Positions 12,433 through 44,607 of a stretch of 64,000 nt of DNA are shown in pieces. The stretch is from NCBI GenBank assembly GCA_977017575.1, contig CDRNVI010000071.1:62001-126000 (forward strand), written 5' to 3'. Within the stretch, counting starts at the first letter, position 1, and every line of letters starts with the position of its first letter. The DNA comes from Paramoeba atlantica (lineage: Eukaryota > Protista > Discosea). The position numbers and the translations under genes were made by a program. The notes under the pieces were generated by a model. That model saw only the letters and a program-made list of their open reading frames with translations. It was not told the DNA's origin and did no database searches.

Positions 12433-13011
12433 GTTTGTTTGTTTATCATGCGCTCTTTGGCGCAGAGATAATCCCCTTAATGCGACGGCCGATATCATCG
12501 GCACATAATCCGCCCACAATGGATGTCGCCAAAGGGGGTTCGACACGGACTCGGTCGGTAGAGAGGTCCAGGCAACTCGCCTCTCTTTACGCAGCCGGAG
12601 GGGCGTACTGCAACCGACTCGGTCCCAGTCGGTAGAGGTGGTCCAGGCAACTCACCACCTCTTTACGCAGCAGGAGGGGCGCACTGCAACCGACCGCTGC
12701 CTCGCGATAATGCGAGGCGGAGTCACGCCCAGTGGTCCTCAAGGGAGGCCACCATGGCGCATAGCTCCCGGGAAGAGACGGGCGCGAGAAGAAGAAAGCC
12801 GGGGAGGGAAGAAAACTCACTCAAGGAGTGAGCCGGGGAGGGGTGAAAAGTCGGAAGTACGTCCCCTACTTCCACGACAAGAGGGACAGTCCCTGCTAGC
12901 CGTCAGCCGGAAACGGGCATTTAAAAGGAAAATGTATGCCCGTTTCCGGGAAATGAAAGGAAGGTCTAGCAAAATGTACCAACAAGGTACAGAAACTGTA
13001 TCTTTATCCTT
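12433..13011 (-). mobile_element. SINE-like non-autonomous retroelement with SL-RNA-like head and (CAAA)n tail
   Basis: Excision restores in-frame S-T-L-M-S-H-Y in the YR gene. The head GATAAAGATACAGTTTCTGTACCTTGTTG is followed by GTACA; the body is hairpin-rich; it ends ATGATAAACAAACAAAC. Confidence 0.8.
12980..13008 (-). ncRNA. Spliced-leader-exon-like 29-mer followed by a GT donor
   Basis: Contains the ACAGTTTCTGTAC core conserved in kinetoplastid/diplonemid SL exons and ends TTG at the same spacing. TGTAC/GTACA across the junction recreates SL RNA stem-loop I. Confidence 0.7.
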
Positions 13012-13622
13012 CAGAGTGCTCAAGGAAGCAGAGTAAGTTCGACGTGTTCCTTCACTTAATGAAGCATCCATAAGTTCTTCGCGATTTTTTTCACTCGGAC
13101 ACTTTACTACGATTTCTCTGCTAAAGCGCTTTGGCATTCAATGAGAAAGACTAGAAGACGTTTCCTTCTAAGACACGTGAACCAGGCTATTTAACCTGGA
13201 TAATTGAAATGTTGTACCTGCAAAGATGAAGTTCGCTACAGAAATCACGGTCAAATTCCCGCCCTCGTTTCATTTCTCATCACATGTAAACAAAGGCACA
13301 ATGCACATGTACATTGTATGACAATATATATCAACAAACAACAAAACAAACATTCAGCCCAGTTCCAATTCACTGCGCTATCTTTTCTGTCAGTAGCCCA
13401 AATTTTTCTTATTCTTGTATATCCTTCCAACTGCCAAAGCCCACACATAGATACCAAAGTCAACTGTTTCGTATTCCTAACTTGCAATACGATATAATCT
13501 ATTTACTTTAGACTTTAAATTAGTCTGTACCATAGCACTACCAGTGAAACTAATGAAACTGAATTAAGATCAATAGGACATGTTTATGACCGATACCGGT
13601 GCCCCACCACTTGGGATACGCC

Positions 13623-14844
13623 TCAGACTATTTGGGTCTCGCTTGGACACATTTTTTGAATATGCCCATATCCGCCACAGTTATTACATTGAAGTGAGCG
13701 AGCTCTGGCTTTTTCTTTCGGTAGGCAAAACTTTCCAGCGTGCCCTATGCCGTCGCATATGGAGCACTTGAGGGTTGGGCTTTTCAATGTAGACTTCATG
13801 AACCGATAGGATCCCCGAGAATAATGCGCTTCCGCTTGGAGTCGCGACCGACTGCCTTGATGAAATACCATTTCTCCTTTGTTTAAATTCACATAGTCAG
13901 CTATCATCTCGTGAGACCCTATCACTTTTTCCAATTTTCTGACCAGTACATCACGTCCGAGGGGAGATAAGGAACCTCCTACTTACCCGTCCTTATTCCC
14001 AGCCTTTTGCTGCAAGCTGTTTCTTGTCAAAGAGCTCCCGACAATAGCTTGATAAAGACTGTTGGGGCATACGTATTCGAATCCCTGCGGAAGTTCTCGA
14101 ATATAGTGCAAAACCCAAACATCGGCTAACATACGAAAGACACGCACTTTCTCCATATCACCAGAAGGGGTTCCCCAGACACGCCCCCCCGTTCGATCTT
14201 CCATGAACTCGGCGGTAAGCTTACCCCATTCCCCATCCTTTAGAAGAGCTGCACGCTCCTTCAAAACTTCGAGGTTTGGCCCACATGCGACACCAAAGTT
14301 TTCAAGTCGAAGGCACGTTAAACCCCGCTGAAATTCTGCGGAAACCTTCGGATATGACTGTGTACCGATAGTCCTCTGCCATCGAAAGAGAAATTTTACG
14401 ATTCGTCTTTCGTTCTTCTCCACTTCGTCGCGTGCTTTCTCCTATCACTGAAAGAATGGCTTCAGTCATGGATCCAGAAACTGACTTGAACACTGTAGAT
14501 AGATTCCGAAGATCAGGTACATGTTCAGTAGTGGCTGACTCAGGAGCACCTTGTGAAATACACGCTCCCGGAGGAGACATCGACTCGCTCGTCTTGAGTT
14601 GCGGTAACACACCTGTCACCATACTCATCAGAGAAATAATTTCGTCGTTCGCCTCCTGCGTGATTCTAAGTCGGTTGGCCTCTTCTGCAGCAATCATCAT
14701 ACCTTGCTGCTCACGAAGAAAAAGAACCGAGTCCAGCAATTCATTGTCTCTTGCCTCCTGTTGCATGGTACGATCTGCCTTCTTGCGGAAACTTCCCTTT
14801 GAAGAATCACTCTTGTGCTTCGCCACCGAGGATACAAGAAACAA
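13623..14844 (-). pseudogene. Gag-like gene of the YR element, split into 3 frames, with two CCHC zinc knuckles
   Basis: CSICDGIGHAGKFC and CNNCGGYGHIQKMC; coiled-coil-like N-terminal ORF 14302-14844; frameshifts near 14420 and 13960. Confidence 0.75.
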
Positions 14845-14951
14845 AGTATATGGAAAGTAAACACTCTTTTCGTTGTTACACTGGTCAGTCCACCTCTACT
14901 TTTTCAATCACAGTCTTCTCAATATTCGTAGGATCTTTTTCTTAAAACTTT

Positions 14952-15106
14952 TTTTTTGTAGTCTAGATCCTCGGATCCAGCCACATTGACTACCATTGCC
15001 CTTCCAGCCCATATTAAACAGGCTAGGGCCTGTGTATACTCGTTATTCATCCTCAAGCATTGTACATAAAATGTCATTTATAACCCTAGGTCATAAATTA
15101 TACTTT
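14952..15106. repeat. Inverted terminal repeat (5' end of element), 155 bp
   Basis: Reverse complement of 9166-9320. Confidence 0.95.
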
Positions 15107-15107
15107 A

Positions 15108-15648
15108 TGTACAAACCTTGAGTCTTACTAACTCCGCCGTTTTCAGGCGTGAACCATGAGAGTCATTTTTGTTCACCTTCACCCCCCTTCCATTGACTTC
15201 GAATTAAACATTCAGAAGTGCAAGTGCTGACAACGTCTGAACAATGGGATATCTTGTCTCTTTTCATATTCACACACATATTCACATATGGTACCAAAGC
15301 GCCCTTTTGCTACCCAATGGGAGCGCAAAATAGGCTTAACCCCACCCGTCAGACATTAGGAGCCAGCAAGCCTACTCTCAAAGCATCACAGCTTCGCTTA
15401 GGCCCCACCCCTCAGGTATTATGGGCCAGTAACTCTACTCTCAAAGCATCACAGCTTCGGTCAGGCCTGATCCTTCAGGCACTATGGGCCCGACTCATTC
15501 AACCCTGCTCATTCAAGACAAATACACTTATGTACCATGGTGGCAAATAATCTTTCGAGTTACCCCTCCTCCCCCGGTCTTGTTGTGTTGACCTGCTCCA
15601 GGCTTGGGACTGGAAACTGCGGAGTTAGTAAGACTCAAGGTTTGTACA
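15108..15648. mobile_element. MITE, 541 bp, perfect 30-bp TIRs, TA target duplication
   Basis: tgtacaaaccttgagtcttactaactccgc (15108-15137) and its reverse complement (15619-15648); TA at 15106-7 and 15649-50; internal about 64-bp tandem at 15361-15490. Confidence 0.85.
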
Positions 15649-15714
15649 TAAAGCAAGATTTGAATTCTGGACTCTGTGCCTAGCGACCTATCATGGTAGA
15701 GATTTTTTTTAATT

Positions 15715-16557
15715 TCACTCTTTACATATGTTTTCCGAGAATTCTATTTGCGTACCATCAAGCGACATTTCTCCCAGTCTTTCAGGAAGCGTAGACCAGT
15801 CTATCTCACCGTACAAGTCAGGGTTATTCTGCAACTGTAGTACTTCTAATTGTGCAGGGATATTATCGAGCAGCACTTGTCCTGAGAACATGTTGTGATC
15901 AAAGTATAATTCTAGAAGGGAAGGTGGCAAATGCTGCAAATGAAGTTCTCCCGTAAATTTATTCCGTGACAAACAAAGGTACTCTATGCTGCACGGCAAA
16001 CGGCTGAGATCAATGTCCCCAGTTAATTTATTATCTTGAAGACGCAACTCATACAAATTGGGCGGCAAATGGGCCAAGTCTACATATCCTTCAAAAAGAT
16101 TCCTGTTTAAAAGGAGATACTCCAGCTCCGGCGGCAATTGACTTAAATTTAATGAACCTGTGAGCTTATTTCCTGACGCAGAAAAGTAGGTAAGCTGTGG
16201 GGGCAGAGAGTCCAGTGGTATTGACCCTGTAAGCTTGTTGTCCCACACAGAAATTTTTTGCAGCGTTCGAGGAAGCCAAAACCACTGGAGAGGTCCGCAG
16301 AGGCCATGGAATCCCCAGTAAATGCATGTCACACGTGCATGCTCATCACACTGTACGCCTTTCCATTTGTAAATTGGTATCGATGTGTTCCAGGAGGGAT
16401 CAGTGTTTTCAACATTCTCAATTAATTTTTCAAGTTCATATTCTTGTGGTAACTCCGAACCTCGTACTTTGCCTGCGGGTTTGTGTTGTGCGTTTGTGTC
16501 CGGAAGATCGGCGGTATAAAATAAAGATACGACAACGTGTGTCGATAACGAATGCAT
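15715..16557 (-). CDS. Leucine-rich repeat protein
   Basis: GKVRGSELPQEYEL motif, WNTSIPIYKWKGVQCD cap, about 7 LPxxLxxLxLxxNxxxG repeats. Confidence 0.9.
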   Translation of the reverse strand: MHSLSTHVVVSLFYTADLPDTNAQHKPAGKVRGSELPQEYELEKLIENVENTDPSWNTSIPIYKWKGVQCDEHARVTCIYWGFHGLCGPLQWFWLPRTLQKISVWDNKLTGSIPLDSLPPQLTYFSASGNKLTGSLNLSQLPPELEYLLLNRNLFEGYVDLAHLPPNLYELRLQDNKLTGDIDLSRLPCSIEYLCLSRNKFTGELHLQHLPPSLLELYFDHNMFSGQVLLDNIPAQLEVLQLQNNPDLYGEIDWSTLPERLGEMSLDGTQIEFSENICKE

Positions 16558-16770
16558 TGGCTTGGTAAAAAAGAACGAGTAACAATAAAATCAATGTGCG
16601 CAACAATAATCTAGATAGATATTAAAAAGACAGGCGGTCCGGTCTAGCACCCTCCCGGTATAGTATGAGGTGACAGGTATGCTACACCGGACAGTGGTAC
16701 ATTCGTGTACCACCCTTACTCAATTATTACTAAACGTGAACACGAACAGTCAAAAACAGAGCACGATCAT

Positions 16771-17619
16771 CTAAGTTGCTTCAGAAGACTTTTTTAGATC
16801 AAATATCTCAACTGTAAAAAAATGTGGCAAGAATTTGGATCCAGGTGATGAATCTCTATTTGGAACATATTCTTTGGCTCCTGACGCAGAGTCGCTCAAA
16901 AGTTTCCTTTCCCGTATCTCGGTTTCATTCTCAATGGATTCTGTGCAATCCTTTAAAGGATTCAGCGTAATCATTAAACCAAGCAAGCGAATAGGAAATA
17001 ACACAAAGTAACCAATATTTCCCATACACCTTGAAACGGTGCGCAAAAACATAGATTCATGCTGATCCTCAACGGAAAAAAGAGCCCATGATAAAAGTAT
17101 TGTAAACAAGGTTGTCCCAGTATATAGGCGCGTGAGAAGTATACTCACCAAAATGCAAAGACACGCCCGCCCTGCATCAACACGCCAAGGGTAGTTGCGC
17201 AAGTAATCGGCCAATAAAATTAAAAAATATGTAACGCAAAGTTTATCAATGTCGATGGCAGCAAAAGCATTTGATATGCGGTAACTCTGAGTGATAAATG
17301 GTGCGCTCGTAGCGTACGAGAAAAATTGTCCGAAATATATTTCTCCTACGTTGGTAGAGAAAAAAGACCTCAAGGAAGCCAAAGTATGCTGTGCTAGAAT
17401 CGAGCAGACGCGAACGCAGAACAGACGACAGAAACTACGCACGCAACCGCTACATCCCTCAACAAAACGTAGAGAGTACATAGAGAACGCAGAAAGCAAA
17501 GTTACCCAAGGAAGGGGAACATAAGAAGTATCCTCAACACTTAAAAGGGTTTGAACCAAAGACACAATCAACAGGGTTCCTGTGATAGGAGTATGTGTTA
17601 GTATGACGCCGAGTGACAT
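16771..17619 (-). CDS. Hypothetical multi-pass membrane protein
   Basis: 282-aa ORF on the polycistron strand with several hydrophobic segments. Confidence 0.65.
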   Translation of the reverse strand: MSLGVILTHTPITGTLLIVSLVQTLLSVEDTSYVPLPWVTLLSAFSMYSLRFVEGCSGCVRSFCRLFCVRVCSILAQHTLASLRSFFSTNVGEIYFGQFFSYATSAPFITQSYRISNAFAAIDIDKLCVTYFLILLADYLRNYPWRVDAGRACLCILVSILLTRLYTGTTLFTILLSWALFSVEDQHESMFLRTVSRCMGNIGYFVLFPIRLLGLMITLNPLKDCTESIENETEIRERKLLSDSASGAKEYVPNRDSSPGSKFLPHFFTVEIFDLKKSSEAT

Positions 17620-17852
17620 GGAGAAAAACGAAGAAGATAGAAATGAAAAAAGAAGTATAAAAATAGTCGTGCCGAAGAGTTATGTGCCATACATGAAAAA
17701 AGTGTAAAAAGAAAATGGAAAATGTTTTTATTTTGCTACGAAGTTAATACTAGGCGCCTCCAAGTCATAAAATAACGAGAGGAAACACTAACCGAGAATA
17801 AGACAAACATTTCTGAACAGTAAATGCACAGAAATAAAGGCTCGGCGTCTTC

Positions 17853-18794
17853 CTACATAAAAAACGGAAGCGACCTTGTCTTCACCACAGGCTTTAGAAT
17901 CTGAAAGCTGCACATTAAATCTGCATCCACCGACATCAATGCACCACTATTATCAAACTCACCACAATAATTTGGAGCGGAAAAAATGGTAATCAGACTG
18001 CGTTTCGCAAAAAACTGATACCCATCCTCCACAACCTGGTGCGCGCGACACAGCAAATCCAGATCATGTTTCTCCAAAAACCGCTCCACAACATCGGTAC
18101 CAAACGTAAACGACACCCCTCTATCGTTTTGTCCCCACCCCACCAACCCCTCCTCGGGGTCTGCCCACAGCAAATCGCACACCAGCCCACTATCCGCGAC
18201 CTCACACGGCCGACGCACCCTCCTTAACTGATCCAAATGCGTAAGCTCCGGACTCAACCCCCCATGCATACACAAAATCTTATCGTCCACCACCGCCGCC
18301 ACGGGCAGCACATTAAACATCTCCGTGAACGCTTTCCACAGCCCCACGGAGTACCGCCGCCGGCACTCCTCGTAAAACCCGTAGATCCGGTTAATACTCG
18401 CGCACTCGTGGTTCCCCCGGAGCAGGAAGAAGTTCTCCGGGTATTTGATTTTGTACACCATTAACAGGCAGATGGTCTCCAGCCCCTGCTTCCCCCGGTC
18501 CACGTAGTCCCCCAGGAAGAGGTAGTTCGCGGAGGGGGGGAAGCCCCCGGCCTCGAACAGGCGCAGCACGTCGTGGTACTGCCCGTGGAGGTCCCCGGCG
18601 ATCTTCAGCGGGGCCTCGAGCTCCAGCAGGGGGGGCTGGGCGAGGAGGAGGTCGCGGGAGGTGGAGACGAGGGTGCGGATCTCGGATTCGCGGAGAGGGG
18701 GGGCGACGGGGGTGCCGGGGCGGGAGGCGCGGACGGAGAGGAGGCGGTGGAGGATGTGGTCGAGGTCGAAAGGGGGGGAGGGAGGGGAGGTCAT
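17853..18794 (-). CDS. PP1: Serine/threonine protein phosphatase 1 catalytic subunit
   Basis: [48 protein letters not shown]. Confidence 0.95.
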
Positions 18795-18892
18795 GATGGG
18801 GTGGGGTGGGGGGTAGGGGTGGAGAAGGGGGCGAGAAATGAGGGTTTGAGGTTTTAAAATGAAAAATGGCGTTGGAGAAGGTTGTTCATATA

Positions 18893-19751
18893 CCGTATAC
18901 TCCCCCAGTAGGAGAATGAGTTTGGGGTCAAAGTGATCAAATCTCTCTTACTGGGGGGTACCGGTCGAGCAAAAAATTTGTCCTTTTTTAATTCGGTCCT
19001 TCGAGCTCGAAAAAAAAGTCGGACCAATATTTATGTTGATCAAAATTATTGAGGCCGAATTTTTCCTGCATTGAAACAAAAAAGATATATTTTCCTGGCC
19101 TCCCTCGAGGCTTGTTATTAGATTTTTCGTTTTCCAGAAAATGAAGGACCGTACTTTTAGATTGTTTTTGCTTTGTGTGCCATTCCAGTAGCTCACAACA
19201 TTTGCAACCTTTCGTGTCGCACACAATTCACAAATTGCTCTAACTTCAGCCTCACTATACACTGTATGTGTTGTAGTGATGACCCTACGTGCGTAGAGTA
19301 AATATCTTGATCAAAGATTTTCTGCACCCATTCAACAGACTGAGACATTACACGAAGACTAAAAAAAGAAGCGTCGATTGAAAGAAGCAAAAATTTCTAA
19401 TGACGAGTTCTAAATTTAGTAAACTTTGAAAACGACTGACAATAAAGTCAAAAAGTATTTTGGACCGCCGCGGAAGGAAAAATAAAGTCGGACCAAAATT
19501 TATGTGGACCAAATTTGTTGGGGCCAAGTAAAAGTGGACCAAATTTTCTGCTCGACCGGTATGTGTTTTTGGCCAGTTTTCTCTTTTCTCCCAACGTTTT
19601 TGACGAATACTTCTTTTTTCTTCTTAAAACGCGTTAAAACGTTTATTTGTGTTGCCTCCGAGGCCCCCGACATGCGGACACCCACTCTCTACGTCCTATA
19701 CGCCTCCTGTGGGGATTTCGAACCAAATCTCTATTACTGGGGGGTATGCGG
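18893..19751. mobile_element. Composite MITE, CCGTATAC-family TIRs, TA-flanked
   Basis: TA|ccgtatactcccccagta ... tactggggggtatgcgg|TA; an extra right-TIR-like copy at about 18944-18960; same TIR family as 33589-33878. Confidence 0.75.
18961..19559. mobile_element. Nested MITE with CCGGTCGAGC TIRs, TA-flanked
   Basis: TA|ccggtcgagcaaaaaatttgtcc ... ggaccaaattttctgctcgaccgg|TA; subterminal ggaccaa repeats. Confidence 0.8.
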
Positions 19752-20951
19752 TACCTGTTCAATGGTTTTACTGTAGTCTAACCCATCCATAGGGTTACTC
19801 TTTAAATATGATTTCTTTTTTAGTCTCTTCGTTAAACCCGTGGTTGTTTCAACTTAGAGGGGTGACTCTGGGTGGGAGCGCCCGGGAGCGCCTAGGATAT
19901 CTTTCGTCAAAAATTTCTTCCTTAGTTTTTTAATATTTTTTTCTTCAATCGGAAGATACAGAAATCATGCTACTGGAATTCTATTCTGCAGGACTTAAAC
20001 GAGGGTTTGGGCATGTAATACACGTTAATGATGCATTTTGCTAGGATTTTTCCAACTTTTTTCGTGAAAATCCGTGCTTGGCGGGGCCATCCTGCGGATA
20101 TCAGGGGGGGTCACCCCCACGTGGGGTTGTAAAATTTGTTCACTTTTTTTTAACAATCGAGGGTACAGCGGTAGTTAAACAACCACAGCAACACGCCTAA
20201 CGTTAAGACCGTCCAAGCGATGGGCTTTTCTTGGTCGAATGAGCAGAGCGTTGTAGGATCGGACTGCGTCAGAGTCTATGTTAGCTCACCCGCTAAAACT
20301 CCACTATCCCAGATTGTTGGTCCAGGACGGTCCTGGCTGGAGAAACGATTTTTTTTACGCTTTTGACCACAGCTTGCACGAGTGTAGTTCCACCTCCACC
20401 GAGGTTACAAGATTGACACGCGGGAAAAGGTTGTGCTAACAACGTATTCCCGGCGATGGACTTGCCGCGCCGTCTTACAACCCAGGAACGCGGTTAACGA
20501 TTCCACGAATAGGGGTTAAACAGGAATAGGAATGGACAAATCCCTGCAGCTAACTGGAAGTCCTTACTTCGGAAAGCTGGGGTCGCCACGCCCCATCACC
20601 GACGACAGCCCAACACCGGTCTCCCTTTCTAACTCTTTGTCATGTTAGCCCAGCACGTTCCATCCAAGGGACATTGAGGATTCTGGACCTCTTTGCGAAA
20701 ATCATTTCACCAAGTCGGATCTCCGTAGAAGTTTACTGGGAGCGCCTGGGAGCGCCCGGGCAGGAGTCACCCCTCTTAGAAGGCACCACCTCTGCGCTCC
20801 TCGCATTGAATACCACCTCCAATCTAATCGAACTTAAAGGGTTCCCACGGATAAATTTCGACGAAACATATTTTTTTATCACACTCTCGTGACACAAGGT
20901 GTGGGAAACATCCTGCGGAGAGAACGCATTATGGATCCCTCAGCGAGATTG

Positions 20952-33385: not shown

Positions 33386-33588
33386 GTGGGTGAAAGGAGA
33401 CGTGTTAAAAAAGGATCAAGTTGGGGTAAATTGGGATAGGGATGAGTATCTGAATGGAGAATTCAAAGAAAGGTACCCCCTGCCCCCAGTACTTTGAATG
33501 AGCAAGTAGGTATCGTAAACAGAGGGCATTGGTTGGGGATATGAACAAAAATACTACAAATAAAATATAAAAGTAAATTGGAACACTA

Positions 33589-35766: not shown

Positions 35767-38580
35767 CTAGACTTGCTCCGGGGCCGAATCCGAGACCCCT
35801 TCCTCCATATCAAGGTCCGTTACACGACCAAGAGTCTCTCCCTGGGGGTTTACGTCCTGCTGGGCGCTGCCAAACCAGTTGCGTGGGTGAGAAAACCAGG
35901 AACGTCCCCACCATCCACGAGAGGGGGCCTCATCCGATTCTAGTGCTTGCTCTTCGGCCTCTTTCAACCCCCCTTGTTCCTCACCCGACTCTCTTTCCGG
36001 GGCCACAACACCGCCTAGTACGGAGTCCGTCGACGAAGAGGAGGAGCGATCCTCCGCGGCAGAGGATCCGGACTGCAACCGAGCAAAGGAAGGCCACGCG
36101 CTCCACGTATAGGTACGCTCCTTGCGGCGGCGATCGGCACCCTCTTCTTTTTCGTCCTCCACGACTTCCTGCTCCAGATCTTCATTCACCCGAGGGATCG
36201 CCTCCTCGCCCTCCTCGTCGGCGACGACCGCGGCGCTGGATTGGCTTGGTTTCGGTGAGGAAAATCCGTGAACTGCAGAGGAAGAGGACCAGGGCCAAGC
36301 TTGAGGAAACCATGAGCCACGAGCTTGGCTATCGGAACGATCACGTGGGCTCCGAGGAGAGGAAGACGCAGATGGGCGAGTGAAGAACCGATTCCACGGG
36401 CGAGCCGAACGCGAAGCAGCAGCCGACGCTGATGACGACGACGAAGAAGAGCTACTTACCGGAGCCTGGCGTCGCTGCGCTCGTCGCCCCCTTGACGGGA
36501 CCCACCACCACGCATCACACCCACGCTCCTCCTGGTTATCCTCCCCCCCTTCCTCCATCCCCCTCCCCATCTCCGCCTCCACCTCCCTCTCCTCTCGTCT
36601 CACCCACCGCACCCCGTTCCGGCACGATCCCCACAACCGTGCGAACACATCCCGTAGCGCCGCCCCGAATCCCCCGACACTACGGCACAGGGGCCCGGAG
36701 CACACCCCCGCCCCCGCCCCCGTGCCGGGCCCCAGCTCCAGCCCCAACGTGTCCGCGTAAGACACCATGGTGTCCGCGACCCAGTTGTCACTGAAGTCAT
36801 CCACCTGCCGCCCCGCGGGGTCGCGCTCCCCGGAGAACGCCCGGGAGGCGTCCGCGTCCTCCGCCCGTTTCTCCATCTGCTCCTGCGGGAGGCGCTCCGC
36901 GGTGACCTCGCGGTACTCCCGCTCGGAGAGGGAGCGCCACGCGTGCCGGTTCTGTAACCGACTCAGGTCCGCGAACAGCTCCGCGGTCTGCTCCTCCTCG
37001 GAGTCACTGACGTTCTGTGGTTTACCCAACCCACTGGGGTTCGCCTTCTCTTCCGTATCCTTTTCTTCCGTATGGCTTTCTTCTTTACTTTCCTCCTTAC
37101 CGTTTTGTTTCGCATCAACGGTGGGTACAGAAGAATCGGGAGAATCGGAAGAGGGCAACGACAGCCCGCTTTGTTGTTCGTGTAACCGACTACGGCTACG
37201 GGGGGAGACCACGTGGGAGGGTTCACCCGTTCGTGGCTTCTGGATCCCCGCCTCGGCGTAGTCCTTCTCGGAGAGCGAGCGCCAGGCGGCACGGTTCTCC
37301 AGACGCTCCAGCTCGGGGAGGGTCAGGGGGCTGCGACGCCCGAGCTCGGGGTCGTCCCCGAGAAGGGGGGAGGGGGGGACGAGGACGGGGGAGGGGAGGG
37401 CCGCCGCGGCCTCGGACATCGCGGCCTGGTACTCCCCCTCCCGGAGACTGCGCCACGCGGCGCGGTTCTCGAGGTTACCGACGAGTTTGTCCAAATGCGC
37501 GAGCTCGGAGAAGGTGACCGGGGAGGAGGGTTCGGGGACCGGGGCGGGTTTCGTGCTCTCCTCCACCGGGGCGGGTTGGTGCGTCGAAGCCTCCACGCGG
37601 GCCTCGTCGAACTCACTCTCGCGTAACGCACGCCAGGAGTGGGAGCGTTCCATCTCGCTTATGAGCTTTTCCATCGCCGGGACCTCCTCAAGGGGGGAGG
37701 GGGGAGGGTTCGTCGTCCCCTCCTCGACGTGGGTGGGTTGGTGGGTCGCAGCCTCGGTCTGGGCCTCGGCAAACTCATTCTCACGGAGCGCGCGCCAGTC
37801 GTGGGGCTGCTCCATCTCCTCCACGAGTTTCTCAATCTTGGGCGACGCTGGGGAGGGGGAGGGGGGCGCTGCTGCTGCTGCTGCTGCGGGTTGTGTCTCC
37901 GCGGGCTCCCCCGTGTCCTCATCCACATCCACGATCTCTACCGAGGGGGGTGGGCTCTTCGCGGCGTGTTCCTGCACACGCGGCGGGGTGCGCTGTTGTT
38001 CGGCGTGCTTAAAGAACTCAAACGATCGCATCGGGGCGGGGCTCTCCAGCCCTTTGTACCCCTCGGACTCCTCCTCGGGGACGGTGACCGTCTCGGGCTC
38101 CGTTTTCGACAACGCATCCTCGAAGCGCTCCGGTTTGCGCTCGTCCAGATGGGCGAGAGCCTGGGCGTGTTCCTTCTCGAGCTCTGTGTCATCCACCGGG
38201 GCCTCGGAAGGGGCAGAGGGGGAAGGGACAGAGATCCCAGCGTCGCGATCCTCGGCGTCCGGCGAAACCGAACCCTCCGCAGGGGGAGATGACGTCGCTT
38301 CTTGTTGTTCCAGGTCAACAGGCTGGGTCTCGGGCTCTGCAGCGGGCGGAGAGACCTCCGCAGGAGCCTCGGGATCTTCTACAGTTGTCGGAACCACAGA
38401 CGGGCTTGAAAGGGGAGCATCTTCCGTAGATGGGGTTTCCGCGTCTGCCTCGTCGTCGGAATCACGTCGTGATTTTTCAGGTGGCACGTCGGAACAAATC
38501 CAAGAGGGAACGTGAGACGGTGGGAACGGGGCAGCGAGGACTAGTGTGAAAACAAGACCCAGTGCCGTAGTCAAGCGCAT
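35767..38580 (-). CDS. Hypothetical signal-peptide-bearing acidic protein with 5 copies of a WR(A/S)LxExE motif
   Basis: MRLTTALGLVFTLVLAA signal-like N-terminus; 937-aa ORF; repeated ExxHxWRALRExEF/Y. Confidence 0.75.
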   Translation of the reverse strand: MRLTTALGLVFTLVLAAPFPPSHVPSWICSDVPPEKSRRDSDDEADAETPSTEDAPLSSPSVVPTTVEDPEAPAEVSPPAAEPETQPVDLEQQEATSSPPAEGSVSPDAEDRDAGISVPSPSAPSEAPVDDTELEKEHAQALAHLDERKPERFEDALSKTEPETVTVPEEESEGYKGLESPAPMRSFEFFKHAEQQRTPPRVQEHAAKSPPPSVEIVDVDEDTGEPAETQPAAAAAAAPPSPSPASPKIEKLVEEMEQPHDWRALRENEFAEAQTEAATHQPTHVEEGTTNPPPSPLEEVPAMEKLISEMERSHSWRALRESEFDEARVEASTHQPAPVEESTKPAPVPEPSSPVTFSELAHLDKLVGNLENRAAWRSLREGEYQAAMSEAAAALPSPVLVPPSPLLGDDPELGRRSPLTLPELERLENRAAWRSLSEKDYAEAGIQKPRTGEPSHVVSPRSRSRLHEQQSGLSLPSSDSPDSSVPTVDAKQNGKEESKEESHTEEKDTEEKANPSGLGKPQNVSDSEEEQTAELFADLSRLQNRHAWRSLSEREYREVTAERLPQEQMEKRAEDADASRAFSGERDPAGRQVDDFSDNWVADTMVSYADTLGLELGPGTGAGAGVCSGPLCRSVGGFGAALRDVFARLWGSCRNGVRWVRREEREVEAEMGRGMEEGGEDNQEERGCDAWWWVPSRGRRAQRRQAPVSSSSSSSSSASAAASRSARPWNRFFTRPSASSSPRSPRDRSDSQARGSWFPQAWPWSSSSAVHGFSSPKPSQSSAAVVADEEGEEAIPRVNEDLEQEVVEDEKEEGADRRRKERTYTWSAWPSFARLQSGSSAAEDRSSSSSTDSVLGGVVAPERESGEEQGGLKEAEEQALESDEAPSRGWWGRSWFSHPRNWFGSAQQDVNPQGETLGRVTDLDMEEGVSDSAPEQV

Positions 38581-39387
38581 AGTGGTGATGTCACAGGTCT
38601 GAGATAGATAAAGTCGTTAAAAAAGAAGAAGAATGAAAGTCTTCTAAGAGATAAAGATCTTTTTTTCGATGATAGTGCAAAAACTATACACCATGTAATG
38701 CATGATCGCTGACTAGTAGTGCAGTCATTCTTAAACTTTGGGACAACCTAACTTTGGGGCAACCTTAACTACAGGGGGGAAATTAAGTTATGTCAACAAA
38801 AGTCGTATTAATTTCTGGGGTTAACACGACTTATGTTGACATAACTTATGTTGCCACAACATACATGTATGTTCACTTTTTTACCAAACTTTGCCAATTC
38901 CTACTGTTTGTTAAAAAACACGCCCATTGAAGAAAAGTTTCATTTAGTCACTCATTTCACAAAGAAAATTGTAAACTTCAAACGCAGTAAAATATTTATA
39001 AGAGCACAGGACCATTTACAGAAGATTCCAAAAAATATATTATGATTTACAAAAGACAATTACCAATCAATCGAGTGACATTTTGTAGCGGAACTCGTGC
39101 GCTTTAGCAGCTCGGACTATCAAGAAAAATATGGCAAAGAAATATGAAGTACCGCCTCCCCACTCGAACGCAACCCAGTTTCGACCTAAAATTGCCATAA
39201 GTGGCCACTCATGCCCCATAGAAAACATTCGTGCAAGAAAACAACTTTGTTTTATCGTCGGAAAATGGCATTTTGAATATCTGCAGCTGACAAATGTTCA
39301 CTCGTATAGCATTCAGTAAACCCCGAGGATAGTTATTATTCCAAAACGTTTTTAGGAAGATTCTGATTCTGCGAAAAAAGTTTTAAC

Positions 39388-39870
39388 TCAAATAAGGAAA
39401 CCTGCAGGAGGCGTACCGACTATACGGGAAATATTATTTCGTTGGAGGCGGCAGTGACGCATGATGTTCGGCAAGTGGTTTACATCGATTTCGCCAGTAA
39501 AACCAGCGCCCTCTGCCCATAATCCGATGAGACCTTTGGGAAGATGTGTAAGGTTTATCGACCCTACGAAATTGTTGTCTGCTAAAGAAATGTATTCTAA
39601 CGTCGCAGGCAGTTTCGTTAAATCGACGGGGCCTTCAAACCTATTGTTGTGCAACATGATGGCCTCCAGGGATGATGGAAGTGATGTCAGATCTACGAAA
39701 TCAGTAAATTTATTTTCGCTTATCGAAAATCCTTGCAAGTGTCCTGGGAGTTGAGAAAAAGCTATGGGACCGTGCAAACTATTCTCTGCAACCCAAAATT
39801 CGAGAATAGTTCCGGCGAGAATTTCCGTGTTTAAATGTCCGAAAATCTTGCTGTTTACACAGTTTAATTT
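39388..39870 (-). pseudogene. 3' half of an LRR gene split by the non-LTR element
   Basis: KLNCVNSKIFGHLNTEILAGTILEFWVAENSLHGPIAFSQLP... continues in frame from the 5' half at 44608-44891. Confidence 0.85.
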
Positions 39871-39952
39871 ATCATACCTTTATAAGGCAGAGAATATGCG
39901 GATAGGCCTGGGGGGAGCATATGACGCTGCCCAGACCTATCTTTTACAGACG

Positions 39953-42900
39953 TTATACCCGTCCTTCTGTCCAAACGGCAGACTCGCGGTTCTGCCAGAT
40001 AATGAAACTGCCTCGAAGGGCGGTCTGCATTAGACTTTCTCGACATTTTTCCGCAAGCTTTGTGTCCTCGTCAAAGAGGAGGTTGAGGTTTCGACAAGAT
40101 GTGAGTAACGAGCCGCGGGCTCCCACTTCGAATACAACAAGGGTCGTCCTAGGGTGATTAATGCGTCGTTCATGGAAGAGAGCATTATATTTACGGGATT
40201 TGCCCTCGTGCGCCTGAGACTGGTTCTCTTCCCAGGGCACAGTGAGCTCAATGATGAACTCACTTCCATCCTTAAGTGTAATCAAACCGTCGGGGCGAAG
40301 AAGGTCCTCACGGGTGCCGAGCCATGCCGGGGCATTCCTAAATCCGGGGATATCTAGGTGTACGCTCTTGGTATACGGCGAACGCATCAAGTGTTTTCCG
40401 AGCTCTTCAAGCAACATGTCATGACGGAGGGTGTATCTCCCTTGCTGAAGGGACTCTTTGCACCCCGAGAGCACGTGCCTTGTTGTTTGAGGTTCGAGTT
40501 TACATATGGGACATGTTACACTCGCACGCCGGAGACCCCAAAGCCGAAGATTGGTTCTGGATGGTAGGGGTGAAAGCGTTAGTACTGAAGCTGCGAAGCG
40601 AGAAAGTTTTTCACTGTTGAGGTTGTTCAGGGCCGCTGAGAACTCTTTCGCGAGATCAGCCTCGGAGGGGAGGCTCCACCATTTTGCTGCTGTCGGTGCC
40701 CGTCTCTGAAGCTGATTTATGACGTAAGATTCATGGTTATCACGGGCTATCTGTTGCGCCTTCCGCGCGTCATGAAGGTGTTGAATGGCGTCAGCGCTTG
40801 GACGAATATAACCAGAGGATCGTTTTTCTTCTTCTTGCTTGATTCGGGCTCGTAGTGCCGCCTGTATCGATGGGTCCCGCGACTTGTGCATCTGTGTTAA
40901 GGCTAGGATAGAGCATTCGGACCACAGCTTGGATAAACTTTTAAGGTTCCACCCTCGTTCAGTATAAAGAATTTCGGTGCAAGTCGTGGATGCTGCATTG
41001 ATCCATTTCTTAAGGTGACGTGTAATTCTTTTCTGCAATCGCAATACAAAGTTGAAAGTGACACACGGGTGAACGGTGAGGGCGTAGCGCAGACGGGATA
41101 CGATCGCTCTGTTGTAGATCCAAAGTTTTTCGGGGAGACTGTGTGCACTCTCGTCGACATTCCGAAGCCATGTTCTTAGTCTGACATCCAGTTTTTTGAA
41201 AAGTTCTTTCGCTTGCTGTGCTCCTGGTGCTATGGTCATTCCAAGAAAAGTGCTTCCACGGTCACATATATGTGGTATCGCTTTGCCTTCGATACTGAGT
41301 CTCGGCTTCCTGGTCATGTAACCCGGGTGCTCACTGCCTTCACGCATGGACATGCACTGTGTACGGCTCTTGTCTACGTTGATTGAGAGTCCTATTCGTC
41401 TCAGTGCAGTTTCGAGTGTGTTGGTCGCGTGCTGCATGTCGGTATCGCTGCTAGTCAGTATCGTCAGGTCGTCAACGTAGGCTTTCAGGAAATGCCTTGG
41501 AGTATCTGGGTAGTCAAGGCCATACCGGGGGCACGATTGCTTGAGGTATCGTAGTACAGTTTCCATCACTAAGTTGAAAATTATGGGCGACAGGGTATCA
41601 CCTTGTAGTACGCCTCTGTGTATCGGTATAGCACGTGACAAACCTTCGACACACTTAATACGCATTTCCGCATGTGAATACATGCTTTCAACGTAGGACA
41701 CGATTTGTGGCGAGACGTTTGCCCATCGCAGTGCCTCGAAGATGATGTTATGGGGGACCGAGCCGAATGCATTGCTGAGATCAAACTGCGTGAGACGATA
41801 TTGCCTTTTGTTTCGACGGTAATATTGTAGTATTTCGGAGAGAGCTTGCGTGTGTTCCAGTGTACCACTCATCTTCGGAAGAAAGCCTTTTTGAACGCTT
41901 GTATCTAGGAGGCCGGAGGACACGGTATGCGTCAAAATTTGGTGTCCGATCATGCTATTGAAAAGTTTGCCTAGAGCGCTAGTCAGGGAGATAGGTCTCC
42001 AGTTTTTCGGGATGTGTTTTTCGCCTCCTTTGTGAATGAGTTTAACTACGGCGGAGGACCAGCATGGCGGGCAGATGCCGTAGCGCAGAAGATCATTAAA
42101 CGTGTTCGCTATACGGGGGTACAGGTATTTGCATTGTTTTAGAAGTGCGTTTGTAATCGTATCACGCCCTGGCGCGCTTGCGCTTCTTTTGCTGCTGAGC
42201 GCGTCTGCGACATCTTGCGCGGTCAGTGGAGACCATTCCATTTCGTTGATGGGTAGAGGACCAAGTACGTTGTTCGGCGGCAGGCGATGCTCTTCGGCGG
42301 GAGGTGCTGTGCTTTCTGTGAAATATTTTTCTATCGTAGGTAAATCGCATTCAGGATATTCGGCGGTGGCGGAGGTCGAGGGGCGGTCCAAGGCCTCGGA
42401 TGCTGCTGTCCACGGGTTCCGCGTGAATCTGCTATGGGCCCATTGTCTTTCTAGCTGTTTCCTATGTGCTTTGGCCTCTTCTGTGTATGTTTTCTCTAGC
42501 TTCTCACTTTCCTTAATGCAGCGACGGAGCTCTTGGCGTTCCGTTCCGTGTGTGTAGCGTAGTGATTTCTTTTGGTTGCGTATGTGTTTCGTCATTTCGT
42601 GGGCTGCATTTTCAGACGAAAGTGGCCGGTGCTTGAATCGGGCGTGTCCGCGTTTCGATCGCGTGAGGAAACCTTTAGTGGGGTTAATCTCTTGTGCAAT
42701 TTCGTATGCCGCCACTGCCAGAGAGGCACCCAGAAGTTCTGCGTTTTTCACTGCGATTTCCGGGGTGTCTACTGTTGGATATTGCAGCCTTCGGCATGTA
42801 TCGTATGCCTTGTTTTCAACCGCCTTCCATTGATCGTCGTTAAGCTTTAGGCACATTTTTCCCCCTGTTATGATTTTGTGTTGTTCAAGCAGATGGAGGC

Positions 42901-44539
42901 GCTCCCTTTCGCTGGTTTCATCCCATGATGGAACTCGAAGTTCCGTAGTGTGCGAAGGAGGAGGAAGAGGAGAAGGTCGGACGAGGGGCTCATTGTACCT
43001 AAGCGGTCCATATATCTTACAGCATTTATGCAGACAGCGTAGCTTGGCCGAGCATCGGTGACGACATGGTTCCACGTGTACGGTGTTCTGTGGGTAATGC
43101 GCTGCACTGCTAGGCGTCGCGTCAGGGAGTGGCGCAGGGTTGTGCATAGTGCTATCTTTGTTGTCAGTGCACGTCGCATCCGTGATTTGCACAGTATGTT
43201 GGTTCCCGTTTGTTGGTCCGTTGATGCTAGTATTGGGAAGGCGGTAGAGGTTTATAACGTTACGCATGGCCCAACCAGCCAATTTAGCAGCTTTCCGTAG
43301 GAAATCACTATCGTTGTCGTTGAGGTTTGGTGTTACGGAGTTCTGGTTGATGTCGACCCCCTCTGTTTGGGTTCCCTCGGCAGGTGGGACCATTTGGACA
43401 TCAGGTGGAGGTTGTGTTGCCGGGTTTAACCCGCGTTCTAAAGTTGTGTGAGCGCCCTCCCGTGATATTGCGTTGCATAGCTTCGTTTGTAGATTTTCAT
43501 TTGTAGAAGTCGCGGAAGTTGGAAAGTCCAGATGCGAAGATTTAATGCCTCGTTTACAACATAGATGTCCGCACGTAGCTTTGTTCTTGCAGTAATGACG
43601 ACATGGATGCGGGGCGGAAGGTTCATCATGTACGGTAGGTTTGCGGTGACCGTTCGACGCATGTGTGTTGCATTTTGTATGTGTCGCAGGTTCCGAAGAG
43701 GTGCTTTCCGGCGTATATTTACTTGGATCTCCTGGGTTGGTGTTATTTGCAGTTCCTTCTGGGACGATCTCAGGTGGCAGTGCTCCTTCTGATGAGCAAT
43801 ATGTAGCGTCCTCACTCGGCAGCGGTCCATAGATTTTACAGCACTTGTGAGCACAGGAGAGTTTGCTCAAGCAGCGGTGCTTGCATGGTCCCTTGTGTTG
43901 ATCAGTTTTACCCTTCTGGGGCTTTGGCGTTCGTGGGGGAGCGATTTTATGAGGGGATTCTTCTATCCTGCGCGGCTTCTCGTATTCCGCGGTTTCAGTG
44001 CTTGGTGTTTCCTGGTTTCTTATGAGCTCGATTTTTATGTGCTTCAGTCCCGATATTTCTCTTCCCTGTATGGCCTTCAGGGCTGCCTTATTTAGCGTGC
44101 TTGGGGTGGAATACTTGTCTCGCAGGCTGAGGGCAGGGTCGGTGTGCATCGAGACCCAGTTTGGGTGCAGGGAGATGGTGTAGGGGTGTTCATTCCTCGT
44201 AACCTTTATATAGTCGCACGCGTTATGCTCCACGAGCTCCTCAAAGGTGGTGTGTTCAGCTACGAGATCGTGTGCTGATGCACACTTACTCAGCAGTTTC
44301 GTGATAGCTACTTCCGCACCTTGTCGGGATGGAATTCTTTGTCTGACTATGGACCATTGGCTCGCGGTCTTAATGTCCGGGAAATACGTCCAATGCAGAT
44401 CAGTGAGGCGTCGTATCTTAACGGGCCGTGATCTGCTGTGGACGAAGTGCAGGGTTTGCGTCTGTACGCCGCCGGAAGCTCGAGGGAGGTCCGGCAGCGC
44501 ATCGTCAACATTCCGCGGAGAAGTGGGATTGTCGGACAT
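39953..44539 (-). CDS. Single ORF: 3 Cys/His zinc-finger repeats + RT + CCHC knuckle + RLE nuclease
   Basis: APGRD, NWRPISL, QKGF, FDLSNAFGSVPH, GVLQGDTLSPIIF, AYVDDL; CPICKLEPQTTRHVLSGC, RHD, RPD, IIELTV. Uninterrupted; first ATG inside the element at 44539. Confidence 0.93.
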   Translation of the reverse strand: MSDNPTSPRNVDDALPDLPRASGGVQTQTLHFVHSRSRPVKIRRLTDLHWTYFPDIKTASQWSIVRQRIPSRQGAEVAITKLLSKCASAHDLVAEHTTFEELVEHNACDYIKVTRNEHPYTISLHPNWVSMHTDPALSLRDKYSTPSTLNKAALKAIQGREISGLKHIKIELIRNQETPSTETAEYEKPRRIEESPHKIAPPRTPKPQKGKTDQHKGPCKHRCLSKLSCAHKCCKIYGPLPSEDATYCSSEGALPPEIVPEGTANNTNPGDPSKYTPESTSSEPATHTKCNTHASNGHRKPTVHDEPSAPHPCRHYCKNKATCGHLCCKRGIKSSHLDFPTSATSTNENLQTKLCNAISREGAHTTLERGLNPATQPPPDVQMVPPAEGTQTEGVDINQNSVTPNLNDNDSDFLRKAAKLAGWAMRNVINLYRLPNTSINGPTNGNQHTVQITDATCTDNKDSTMHNPAPLPDATPSSAAHYPQNTVHVEPCRHRCSAKLRCLHKCCKIYGPLRYNEPLVRPSPLPPPSHTTELRVPSWDETSERERLHLLEQHKIITGGKMCLKLNDDQWKAVENKAYDTCRRLQYPTVDTPEIAVKNAELLGASLAVAAYEIAQEINPTKGFLTRSKRGHARFKHRPLSSENAAHEMTKHIRNQKKSLRYTHGTERQELRRCIKESEKLEKTYTEEAKAHRKQLERQWAHSRFTRNPWTAASEALDRPSTSATAEYPECDLPTIEKYFTESTAPPAEEHRLPPNNVLGPLPINEMEWSPLTAQDVADALSSKRSASAPGRDTITNALLKQCKYLYPRIANTFNDLLRYGICPPCWSSAVVKLIHKGGEKHIPKNWRPISLTSALGKLFNSMIGHQILTHTVSSGLLDTSVQKGFLPKMSGTLEHTQALSEILQYYRRNKRQYRLTQFDLSNAFGSVPHNIIFEALRWANVSPQIVSYVESMYSHAEMRIKCVEGLSRAIPIHRGVLQGDTLSPIIFNLVMETVLRYLKQSCPRYGLDYPDTPRHFLKAYVDDLTILTSSDTDMQHATNTLETALRRIGLSINVDKSRTQCMSMREGSEHPGYMTRKPRLSIEGKAIPHICDRGSTFLGMTIAPGAQQAKELFKKLDVRLRTWLRNVDESAHSLPEKLWIYNRAIVSRLRYALTVHPCVTFNFVLRLQKRITRHLKKWINAASTTCTEILYTERGWNLKSLSKLWSECSILALTQMHKSRDPSIQAALRARIKQEEEKRSSGYIRPSADAIQHLHDARKAQQIARDNHESYVINQLQRRAPTAAKWWSLPSEADLAKEFSAALNNLNSEKLSRFAASVLTLSPLPSRTNLRLWGLRRASVTCPICKLEPQTTRHVLSGCKESLQQGRYTLRHDMLLEELGKHLMRSPYTKSVHLDIPGFRNAPAWLGTREDLLRPDGLITLKDGSEFIIELTVPWEENQSQAHEGKSRKYNALFHERRINHPRTTLVVFEVGARGSLLTSCRNLNLLFDEDTKLAEKCRESLMQTALRGSFIIWQNRESAVWTEGRV

Positions 44540-44567
44540 GTTGGAGATACAGTTTAGAAAAAAAAAA

Positions 44568-44596
44568 CAACAAGGTACAGAAACTGTATCTTTATC
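44568..44596 (-). ncRNA. Spliced-leader-exon-like 29-mer at the LINE 5' end
   Basis: Identical to 12980-13008; followed by T10 rather than a GT donor. Confidence 0.7.
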
Positions 44597-44607
44597 TTTA
44601 TTTATGA

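What the first reader, a model, noticed from the sequence alone, without database searches (positions are those of the whole stretch)
12433..44607. Candidate new system: a LINE and a SINE that both begin with the same spliced-leader sequence and share a 3' end structure
Seen: two unrelated insertions, the 579-bp SINE (12433-13011) and the 4.7-kb RLE LINE (39871-44607), carry an identical 29-mer GATAAAGATACAGTTTCTGTACCTTGTTG at their 5' ends (12980-13008; 44568-44596). Both end TCTCT-[short hairpin]-ATGATAAA (LINE: GCCTT-ATA-AAGGT; SINE: GCGC-CAAAGA-GCGC), so the structure is kept while the stem sequence differs. Known: ACAGTTTCTGTAC..TTG is the conserved 3' part of kinetoplastid SL exons. CRE1, SLACS and CZAR are RLE elements that insert near nt 11 of the SL exon, and as recalled CRE1 duplicates 29 bp. 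SINEs typically borrow the partner LINE's 3' end. Inference: an SL-associated autonomous/non-autonomous pair that has also inserted outside the SL array, here into an LRR gene and a recombinase gene.
Basis: partly seen in the sequence, partly recalled or inferred. Interest (0 to 1): 0.92.

Follow-up and report, generated by a model that had tools for sequence, protein, structure and literature searches.

The report
Retroelements capped by the spliced leader
In a kinetoplastid-type genome, an R2-like jumping gene and a short non-coding partner both begin with a copy of the host's spliced-leader exon, most likely because they were copied back into DNA from RNAs that already carried the leader, not because they target spliced-leader genes.

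Summary
The 29-mer occurs twice, at the 5' ends of a 4.7-kb LINE and a ~580-bp non-coding element, with none expected by chance. It is nt 10-38 of a real 38-nt spliced-leader (SL) exon. A metagenomic SL RNA/5S repeat carries it directly before the intron. Contigs of this organism hold the same gene at about 20 times single-copy depth.

In 13 loci (~300 kb) I found 22 independent SL heads, none in an SL gene. All stop at the exon's last base and then continue into element-specific 5' UTRs. Their 5' starts range from nt 1 to nt 27; half start at nt 10-13. A 5'-truncated copy has no head. Within one young LINE family the SL/UTR joint differs between copies.

The shared 3' module is real: CTCT, hairpin, ATGA. 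Its stem differs in at least 8 families. TAAA is not part of it.

Best reading (0.68): retroposition of SL-bearing, probably trans-spliced, RNAs by an R2-like LINE superfamily and its parasites. A CRE-like origin from SL genes remains a rival (0.18).

New here: the LINE 5' UTRs contain an antisense copy of part of the SL.

The scan's first readers noted SL-headed elements elsewhere in this genome (175 notes).

The parts
39863..44596 (-). Full-length LINE ('LINE-w'), an R2-like non-LTR retrotransposon with one ORF, inserted in an LRR-type gene
   Evidence: Independent copies at 98.4-99.4% identity share these limits: L010, L012, and L011, which is 5'-truncated. L009 is an allelic haplotig (99.98%). 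Flanking ORFs hit LRR_4/LRR_1 and LRRNT_2.
44568..44596 (-). SL head of the LINE, equal to SL exon nt 10-38
   Evidence: Exact match to L004 positions 54->26, which are followed there by the GTATGAG intron. The same exon is in this organism's high-depth SL gene contig.
44540..44567 (-). LINE 5' UTR: T10, CT, then an 11-nt antisense copy of SL nt 15-25 (44545-44555), then CCAAC before the ATG
   Evidence: The antisense match was reached by 2 of 2000 shuffles. The predicted 11-bp stem with the head has dG -10 kcal/mol and z -2.2.
39953..44539 (-). LINE ORF, 1528 aa
   Evidence: Three CxHxC-x5-CxHxCC motifs at 43838-43885, 43556-43603 and 43019-43066. RVT_1 at about 41321-42034 (YVDD at 41468-41479). 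CCHC at 40460-40513. RLE motifs RPDG, IIELTV and KSRKY at 40187-40297. From.
39863..39893 (-). LINE 3' module: TCTCTG, hairpin, TATGA (39872-39893), then tail TAAATTAAA (39863-39871)
12423..13008 (-). SINE-like non-autonomous retroposon (family A). It has no ORF and no match to any Rfam family. The 3' limit is uncertain, between 12436 and 12423.
   Evidence: Copies at L001:6228-6797 and L007:17355-17922(-) are 85-86% identical. Rfam shows nothing.
12980..13008 (-). SL head of the SINE, equal to SL exon nt 10-38
12446..12468 (-). SINE 3' module: TCTCTG, hairpin (GCGC..GCGC), CATGA, followed by an A-rich tail (TAAACAAACAAAC, 12423-12435)
6518..6638 (+). Fragment of the same SINE family
   Evidence: 79% identity over 121 nt.

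Best explanation
The window holds one intact copy of an R2-like LINE (restriction-like endonuclease type) and one copy of a short non-coding element that parasitises such LINEs. Both are DNA copies of RNAs that carried the host spliced-leader exon at their 5' end.

Shown:
- The head is SL exon sequence.
- It always ends at the exon's last base and runs straight into the element's own 5' UTR.
- Its 5' extent varies between copies.
- 5'-truncated copies lack it.
- Copies lie outside SL genes.
- The LINE encodes RT, a CCHC motif and an RLE.
- LINEs and SINEs share a covarying 3' hairpin module.

Inferred:
- In this genome, where all window genes lie on one strand as in polycistronic units, the elements have no promoter of their own. 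Their RNA is matured like any mRNA by SL trans-splicing at an AG in a source copy.
- The LINE protein nicks the target and primes reverse transcription on the 3' module (CTCT-hairpin-ATGA plus a short A-rich tail).
- It copies the RNA up into the SL, and an imprecise R2-like 5' join trims the head by 0 to about 27 nt.
- The SINE is mobilised in trans through the same 3' module.
- The SL is taken up anew at each round, which would keep heads identical to the current SL while element bodies diverge.
For: 1. True SL.
- L004 is a permuted SL RNA/5S rRNA repeat. Its exon is 38 nt followed by GTATGAGAAGC, and the 29-mer is exon nt 10-38.
- This organism's contigs hold the same exon 3' part plus intron start at 58x, against 2-3.6x for single-copy contexts in run X1.
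- More than 100 low-depth DNA contigs join the exon at its last base to other sequence.
- A contig of the run labelled 'RNA?' carries the full exon plus 521 nt.

2. Heads.
- There are 22 independent heads in about 300 kb, none followed by the intron.
- At least 6 LINE families with 44-56% protein identity each have their own UTR directly after ...TTG.

3. Starts vary: nt 1 (two heads), 3, 8-9, 10 (five heads), 11-13 (seven), 17-18, 21-27.

4. L011 holds a 5'-truncated LINE-w copy without a head.

5. In the young LINE-w family (>98% identity) the joint differs between copies: TTG|T10, TTG|T9, TTG|AATA|T10 and TTG|CTTGTTG|T10. L005 and L013 have a relic of SL nt 29-38 between the head and the UTR. 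The leader was therefore added more than once.

6. SINE bodies differ by 14-24%, while their heads are nearly perfect.

7. The 3' hairpin is kept with different stems in 8 families found by position or homology. The stems sum to 38 bp; 0 of 20000 shuffles reach that.

8. RT through RLE aligns to R2 structures at E 1.5e-32.
Against: - No source copy with an AG acceptor in front of the UTR was seen. Head-bearing copies end in TTG at the joint, so they cannot be re-spliced there.
- The relic pieces begin after TG or AC in the SL, not after AG.
- Both heads that reach nt 1 continue with 7-13 nt resembling the DNA upstream of the SL gene (P about 0.001 and 0.014). A mature capped SL cannot provide these bases.
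- Half the heads start at nt 10-13, next to the site homologous to the CRE/SLACS/CZAR site, and this is unexplained.
- No RNA reads of the elements themselves were examined. The one RNA-type run is held only as contigs and its label is uncertain.
- The loci were chosen through LINE proteins, so the sample is biased.
Confidence: 0.68

Rival explanations
1. CRE-like origin. Master copies sit in SL RNA genes, fused to the exon, and are transcribed from the SL gene promoter. The head is gene-derived read-through sequence or a target duplication. Dispersed copies such as the two in the window are off-target offspring.
For: - Both heads that reach nt 1 carry bases like the SL gene's upstream DNA.
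- The commonest head start, nt 10, is one base from the position homologous to nt 11/12, where SLACS and CZAR insert (PMC5814959).
- A join at the exon end of an SL gene would explain relic pieces that abut a new full SL without an AG.
- SL-gene-resident RLE LINEs exist in kinetoplastids (PMC12278014).
Against: - None of 22 heads is in an SL gene.
- One search lists no joint within the SL exon at high depth.
- The elements have no poly(A) tail and no TSD, unlike CRE (PMC12278014, PMC3636483).
- The joint falls exactly on the exon's last base in at least 6 divergent families. Splicing makes that automatic; an endonuclease stagger would need it to be a conserved coincidence.
- No trypanosomatid CRE protein was seen among the hits that carry names.
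- The DNA after the L008 LINE is not the rest of an SL gene.
Confidence: 0.18
2. Template-jump chimeras. The element RNA has no leader. On reaching its 5' end, the R2-like RT jumps to the 3' end of a free SL exon or another SL-bearing RNA. The head is then added during reverse transcription.
For: - Joints without an AG: the relics that start at nt 29 and nt 32, and 4 extra bases (AATA) at one joint, as with untemplated additions.
- L001 looks like a LINE/SINE chimera.
- Repeated 5' addition of snRNA heads to SINEs is documented (PMC4494074).
- End-to-end jumping is a known property of R2 RT (my own knowledge, not checked here).
Against: - Free SL exon is a rare splicing intermediate, whereas every mRNA in kinetoplastids receives the SL by trans-splicing (established knowledge).
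- The joint is the same in most copies of a family.
- LINE translation needs a capped, hence SL-bearing, mRNA anyway.
Confidence: 0.1
3. The head is a fixed, inherited part of the elements, captured once as a cis-acting sequence and simply copied at each generation.
For: It is present in all intact copies of all families. The UTRs hold sequence complementary to it, which suggests a function.
Against: - Heads are near-identical to the SL across families whose proteins are only 44-56% identical.
- The joint varies within one family of >98% identity.
- Double heads occur.
Confidence: 0.04

Closest known systems
CRE clade (CRE1, CRE2, SLACS, CZAR) of trypanosomatids
   Same: Kinetoplastid non-LTR elements with RT, RLE and zinc-finger-like motifs, linked to the spliced leader (PMC12278014, PMC5814959).
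   Different: CRE elements sit inside SL RNA genes between exon nt 11 and 12, and have poly(A) tails and TSDs. The elements here are dispersed, for example in LRR genes and microsatellites. They end in a hairpin-ATGA module. They carry the exon's 3' part, up to the whole exon, in front of their own UTR. No named CRE protein appeared among the checked hits.
SL-tagged retrogenes of dinoflagellates (DinoSL relics)
   Same: A DNA-encoded spliced leader at the 5' end of retrocopies, sometimes with a relic leader behind a new one, read as cycles of trans-splicing and retroposition (PMC6050394, PMC5585692, PMC12014239).
   Different: In dinoflagellates host mRNAs are tagged and the relics are cut at the AG inside DinoSL. 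Here the tagged molecules are the retroelements themselves, and the relics do not start after an AG.
R2 elements
   Same: One ORF with RT, CCHC and a C-terminal RLE. No poly(A) tail; the 3' end is structured. The 5' joins are imprecise and there is no promoter of their own. Best match among solved structures.
   Different: R2 inserts in 28S rDNA and frees its 5' end from the co-transcript with a ribozyme (my own knowledge). These elements are dispersed, have a different N-terminal Cys/His repeat, and their 5' end is the SL.
Stringent LINE/SINE pairs that share a 3' stem-loop (e.g. UnaL2/UnaSINE1, Kajikawa and Okada 2002, as cited in PMC4494074 and PMC5786205)
   Same: A non-autonomous partner carries the LINE-type 3' recognition module.
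   Different: The SINE stem sequence matches none of the 8 sampled LINE families; only the architecture matches. The SINE head is not a Pol III gene.
SINEU (SINEs with U1/U2 snRNA heads)
   Same: A short retroposon whose head comes from a Pol II small RNA without an internal promoter, added repeatedly (PMC4494074).
   Different: The head here is only the SL exon, cut at the splice donor, so it is a splicing product and not a copy of the small RNA.
L1Tc/ingi with the Pr77 5' hallmark
   Same: Kinetoplastid LINE and SINE-like families sharing one 5' sequence (PMC8190864, PMC1874656).
   Different: Pr77 is an element-encoded promoter/ribozyme that gives unspliced transcripts. Here the shared 5' sequence is the host's leader.

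Membership tests
RLE-type (R2-group) non-LTR retrotransposon | Reverse transcriptase domain | tested here: met
   RVT_1 E 2.2e-31; YVDD at aa 1021-1024.
RLE-type (R2-group) non-LTR retrotransposon | CCHC motif and PD..(D/E)..K endonuclease C-terminal to the RT, with no APE domain | tested here: met
   Aligns to R2 structures 9nl3 and 9dou over aa 772-1478, pairing CPIC..H..C, RPD, ELTV and KxxKY. No Exo_endo_phos hit.
CRE clade | Insertion at one fixed position of the SL RNA gene exon | tested here: not met
   None of 22 heads, including 12 LINE copies, is followed by the SL intron. No SL gene is present in the window or in the 12 loci.
CRE clade | Poly(A) tail and target-site duplication | tested here: not met
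   The elements end in ATGA plus a short family-specific A-rich tail. No TSD in 5 LINE-w insertions.
CRE clade | RT groups with CRE1/SLACS/CZAR in a phylogeny | not testable with these tools
   No labelled CRE, NeSL, R4, HERO or Utopia sequences could be fetched. Indirect evidence only: none was named among the 65 word-index hits or the 10 best outside hits looked up.
SL-tagged retrocopy (as in dinoflagellates) | Genomic copy of the SL exon ending at the splice donor, joined to a transcript's 5' UTR, in an organism that has that SL gene | tested here: met
SL-tagged retrocopy (as in dinoflagellates) | Relic leaders truncated at a splice-acceptor AG | tested here: not met
   Relics start at SL nt 29 (L005, L013) and nt 32 (L010), after TG and AC.
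Classical SINE | Head derived from tRNA, 7SL or 5S with an internal Pol III promoter | tested here: not met
   No Rfam match at E <= 1 apart from a chance-level microRNA hit. The head is the SL exon.
Classical SINE | Short, non-coding, with a 3' end like that of a LINE in the same genome | tested here: met
   About 580 bp with no ORF. It carries the CTCT-hairpin-ATGA module.

The most novel reading that the evidence does not exclude
The spliced leader is a working part of these elements, not just a scar. Their 5' UTRs carry an antisense guide of 8-14 nt against different parts of the SL, depending on the family. This guide would either recruit SL RNA, so that a promoter-less copy is capped wherever it lands, or fold with the head into a 5' hairpin that the LINE protein reads together with the 3' hairpin, as in two-ended RNA recognition by R2. 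The SINE would then mimic both ends. The clustering of head starts at nt 10-13 and the SL-gene-like bases on full-length heads would be traces of descent from CRE-like elements that targeted the SL gene.
Probability: 0.2. Interest if true: 0.85.

Novelty: new variant of a known kind. Interest (0 to 1): 0.7.

Why it matters
Kinetoplastid genes lack individual promoters, so how a promoter-less LINE gets expressed is a real question. Two answers are known. One is an internal promoter/ribozyme (Pr77 of L1Tc/ingi). The other is residence in SL RNA genes (CRE/SLACS/CZAR).

These elements point to a third: use the host's trans-splicing, which leaves the leader written at the 5' end of every intact copy. 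This gives a natural tag for full-length retrocopies and for counting rounds of retroposition, as DinoSL does in dinoflagellates, but here in a kinetoplastid and on the mobile elements themselves.

It also gives a tractable LINE/SINE system with a very small 3' recognition module, a hairpin of 3-6 bp between CTCT and ATGA.

The unexplained features make the link between SL-gene-specific and dispersed RLE elements testable. These are the antisense-SL in the UTRs, the head starts near the CRE site, and the relics without an AG.

Tried and rejected
- Rfam on the whole window, on the SINE and on L004 found only 5S in L004. No SL RNA family matched and the SINE has no small-RNA head.
- A full-text search for the SL 3' 19-mer found no paper.
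- The CRE1 and CRE2 papers (PMC360853, PMC307132) are not held. The recalled 29-bp CRE1 duplication could not be verified.
- TSD search: no shared flank bases in 5 LINE-w insertions or in the SINE copies.
- An empty site for the window SINE was sought in the other loci; there is no second copy of the host element.
- Rejected: the SINE as a copy of the whole SL RNA. Only GTA follows the exon. The rest is unlike the intron, and GTACA also pairs with SL nt 27-31.
- Rejected: GATAAA as a target duplication that creates the head start. The LINE tail is TAAATTAAA in three loci with different flanks, and SINE tails differ.
- Rejected: tandem slippage as the origin of the double heads. All three repeated units end exactly on the exon's last base.
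- A labelled RT phylogeny was not possible. The exhaustive search returns unnamed proteins, and the nearest named ones are uncharacterised animal proteins.
Full report
**Observation.** The 29-mer lies on the minus strand at 12980-13008 and 44568-44596. These are the only two matches at up to 3 mismatches, and none is expected by chance. All long ORFs of the window are on the minus strand, as in a polycistronic unit. Minus-strand ORF 39953-44539 encodes 1528 aa. It holds three N-terminal CxHxC-x5-CxHxCC motifs, an RVT_1 domain, a CCHC motif and RPDG/ELTV/KxxKY motifs. Residues 772-1478 align with solved R2 proteins (9nl3, 9dou; E about 1e-32), pairing the CCHC and the PD..E..K endonuclease residues. 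It is therefore an RLE-type non-LTR element. The short element has no ORF and no Rfam match.

**Is the head a real spliced leader?** One JGI metagenome contig (L004, 1785 bp) contains the 23-nt core.
- It is a circularly permuted tandem unit with a 5S rRNA gene.
- On the other strand it carries a 38-nt exon starting AACT. The exon ends in the finding's 29-mer and is followed by GTATGAGAAGC, then a stem-loop and a T run.
- I laid contigs of four runs of the window's organism on L004.
  - A contig at 58x in run X1 is identical over exon nt 12-38 plus 18 intron bases. Single-copy contexts there have 2-3.6x.
  - A 5S contig has similar depth.
  - More than 100 low-depth DNA contigs carry the exon joined at its last base to other, mostly T-rich, sequence. 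Some reach exon nt 1, 3 or 6.
  - A contig of the run labelled 'RNA?' holds the full exon plus 521 nt.

So the 29-mer is nt 10-38 of this organism's SL exon. The first ~10 nt were not read base by base in this organism.

**Other copies.** Protein searches gave paralogues from one ENA assembly, and I fetched 12 loci.
- With the window they total about 300 kb and hold 22 independent heads. None is in an SL gene.
- Twelve heads belong to LINE copies of at least 6 families (44-56% protein identity). About seven belong to SINE-like elements and three to unidentified repeats.
- Every head ends at ...TTG and continues into a family-specific UTR.
- Starts are nt 1 (two heads), 3, 8-9 (two), 10 (five), 11-13 (seven), 17-18 (two) and 21-27 (two); one head is too degenerate to place.
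- A 5'-truncated LINE-w copy (L011) has no head.

The shared 29 nt in the window reflect the commonest truncation point, not a fixed unit.

**The LINE-w family.** There are five independent insertions at 98.4-99.4% identity, plus an allelic haplotig (L009).
- They set the 3' end at ...ATGA + TAAATTAAA (window 39863) and show no TSD.
- The joints differ: TTG|T10 (window), TTG|T9 (L001), TTG|AATA|T10 (L012) and TTG|CTTGTTG|T10 (L010).
- L005 and L013, from two other families, have a relic of SL nt 29-38 between a new head and the UTR.
- All three repeated units end exactly at the exon's last base, which argues against slippage.

The leader was therefore added repeatedly, not inherited once. The same follows from heads being near-perfect while SINE bodies differ by 14-24%.

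**The 3' module.** All 8 families located by position or homology have CTCT, a 3-6 bp hairpin and (Y)ATGA, with different stem sequences. The stems sum to 38 bp, reached by 0 of 20000 shuffles. What follows ATGA is a short A-rich tail that is specific to the family, not TAAA in general. Two SINE families share the 5' ~290 nt and differ in the 3' half and its hairpin. No sampled LINE has the SINE's stem.

**New feature.** LINE 5' UTRs contain an antisense copy of part of the SL, 12-18 nt after the joint.

| Family | SL nt covered | Support |
|---|---|---|
| LINE-w | 15-25 | 2/2000 shuffles |
| L008/L003-/L013 | 6-19 | 0/2000 shuffles |
| L005 | 7-17 | 0/2000 shuffles |
| L006 | 24-31 | 99/2000 shuffles |
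| L002/L003 | 16-31, imperfect | fold z -3.3 |

The head and UTR fold into a hairpin (z -2.2 to -4.7 in the LINE folds). The SINE has only a 6-bp version.

**Mechanism.** The simplest account is that promoter-less elements in a trans-splicing genome are matured like mRNAs. Their RT, primed on the 3' module, copies the RNA into the leader, and an imprecise 5' join trims it. A stringent 3' requirement would explain why heads in my (biased) sample sit on retroelements rather than on host retrogenes.

Points against or unexplained:
- No source copy with an AG acceptor was seen.
- The relics start after TG or AC.
- Half the heads start at nt 10-13. The position homologous to the SLACS/CZAR site (nt 11/12 of a 39-nt SL, PMC5814959) is 10/11 here.
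- Both heads reaching nt 1 continue with bases like the SL gene's upstream DNA (P about 0.001 and 0.014).
- L001 joins a 3'-truncated LINE-w to a complete SINE.

These points keep two rivals alive: a CRE-like model with masters in SL genes, and an RT template-jump model.

**Comparison with known systems.** CRE elements are defined by a fixed SL-gene site, a poly(A) tail and TSDs (PMC12278014, PMC3636483). None of these is met here.
- In an exhaustive HMMER search, the best full-length hits outside this LINE superfamily (29-33% identity) are unnamed metagenomic proteins or uncharacterised animal proteins, such as from Artemia and the sponge Corticium. No trypanosomatid CRE protein was named among the hits looked up.
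- The N-terminal Cys/His repeat was found in all 9 full-length or near-full-length proteins of this genome's families that I scanned, and in none of the 14 outside hits checked.
- SL-tagged retrocopies with relic leaders are known for dinoflagellate host genes (PMC6050394, PMC5585692).
- SINE heads from Pol II small RNAs are known (PMC4494074).
- My literature searches found no description of kinetoplastid LINE/SINE families headed by the SL. The library is incomplete, so this is not proof of absence.

**Earlier notes of this scan.** 175 first-reader notes in this genome mention the SL. They include the same reading, relic leaders, and SL inside YR retroelements. They are unchecked. I tested the first two ideas here on other loci.

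**Verdict.** Its mechanism is probably wrong: the head is not target-derived in the CRE manner. I rate it a new variant of known kinds, with several open and testable oddities.

Noticed in passing
window 9163-15109: A 5.9-kb element bounded by 158-nt inverted terminal repeats (99% identical). It has a zf-CCHC ORF (13623-13934, minus strand) and a 618-aa ORF (9551-11407, minus strand) whose Atlas neighbours are Euglenozoa RT/RNase H proteins. It is a candidate DIRS/VIPER-like retroelement, and the SINE lies inside it.
   Followed up: partly
L008:9310-9360 and L011:18898-18940 (minus strand): The two heads that reach SL nt 1 continue upstream with bases resembling the DNA in front of the SL RNA gene in L004 (P about 0.001 and 0.014). 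They also carry errors within nt 1-10.
   Followed up: partly
L001:2715-2770 and L001:6200-6800: The 5' join of a LINE-w copy has a partial duplicate of the head (a 21-nt unit, then TTCA, then the head). The same copy stops at element nt 3482 and is followed, after GATTG, by a complete SL-headed SINE. This is either a chimera or an insertion with a deletion.
   Followed up: partly
L006:9900-9925 and 14700-14800; L002:8346-8380; L012:9250-9278: LINE copies sit in simple repeats: (GT)n on both sides in L006, (TA)n at the 3' end in L002, and an AT-rich repeat at the 5' end in L012. This may be a target preference.
   Followed up: no
L008:14985-15551 and L010:13476-13950 (minus strand): A second SINE family shares the first ~290 nt with the window's SINE. 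Its 3' half is different and has its own hairpin (GCACT..AGTGC).
   Followed up: partly
runs X4 and X5, loose ends at L004 place 58: A repeated element has SL nt 6-38 in its interior, preceded by ...GCGAAATTGCACTTAGAGG. It is present in DNA contigs and in a contig of depth 1180 from the RNA-labelled run. It may be the SL-containing YR retroelement described in other notes of the scan.
   Followed up: no
P0096 (closest protein outside this genome, 33% identity over RT-RLE): Its N-terminal half carries repeated CCCH-type zinc fingers in place of the CxHxC-x5-CxHxCC repeats of this genome's LINEs.
   Followed up: no
window 1-64000: Many LRR-type ORFs and long proline- or glycine-rich low-complexity coding stretches. 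Both LINE-w copies with known context, the window copy and L001, lie in LRR genes.
   Followed up: no
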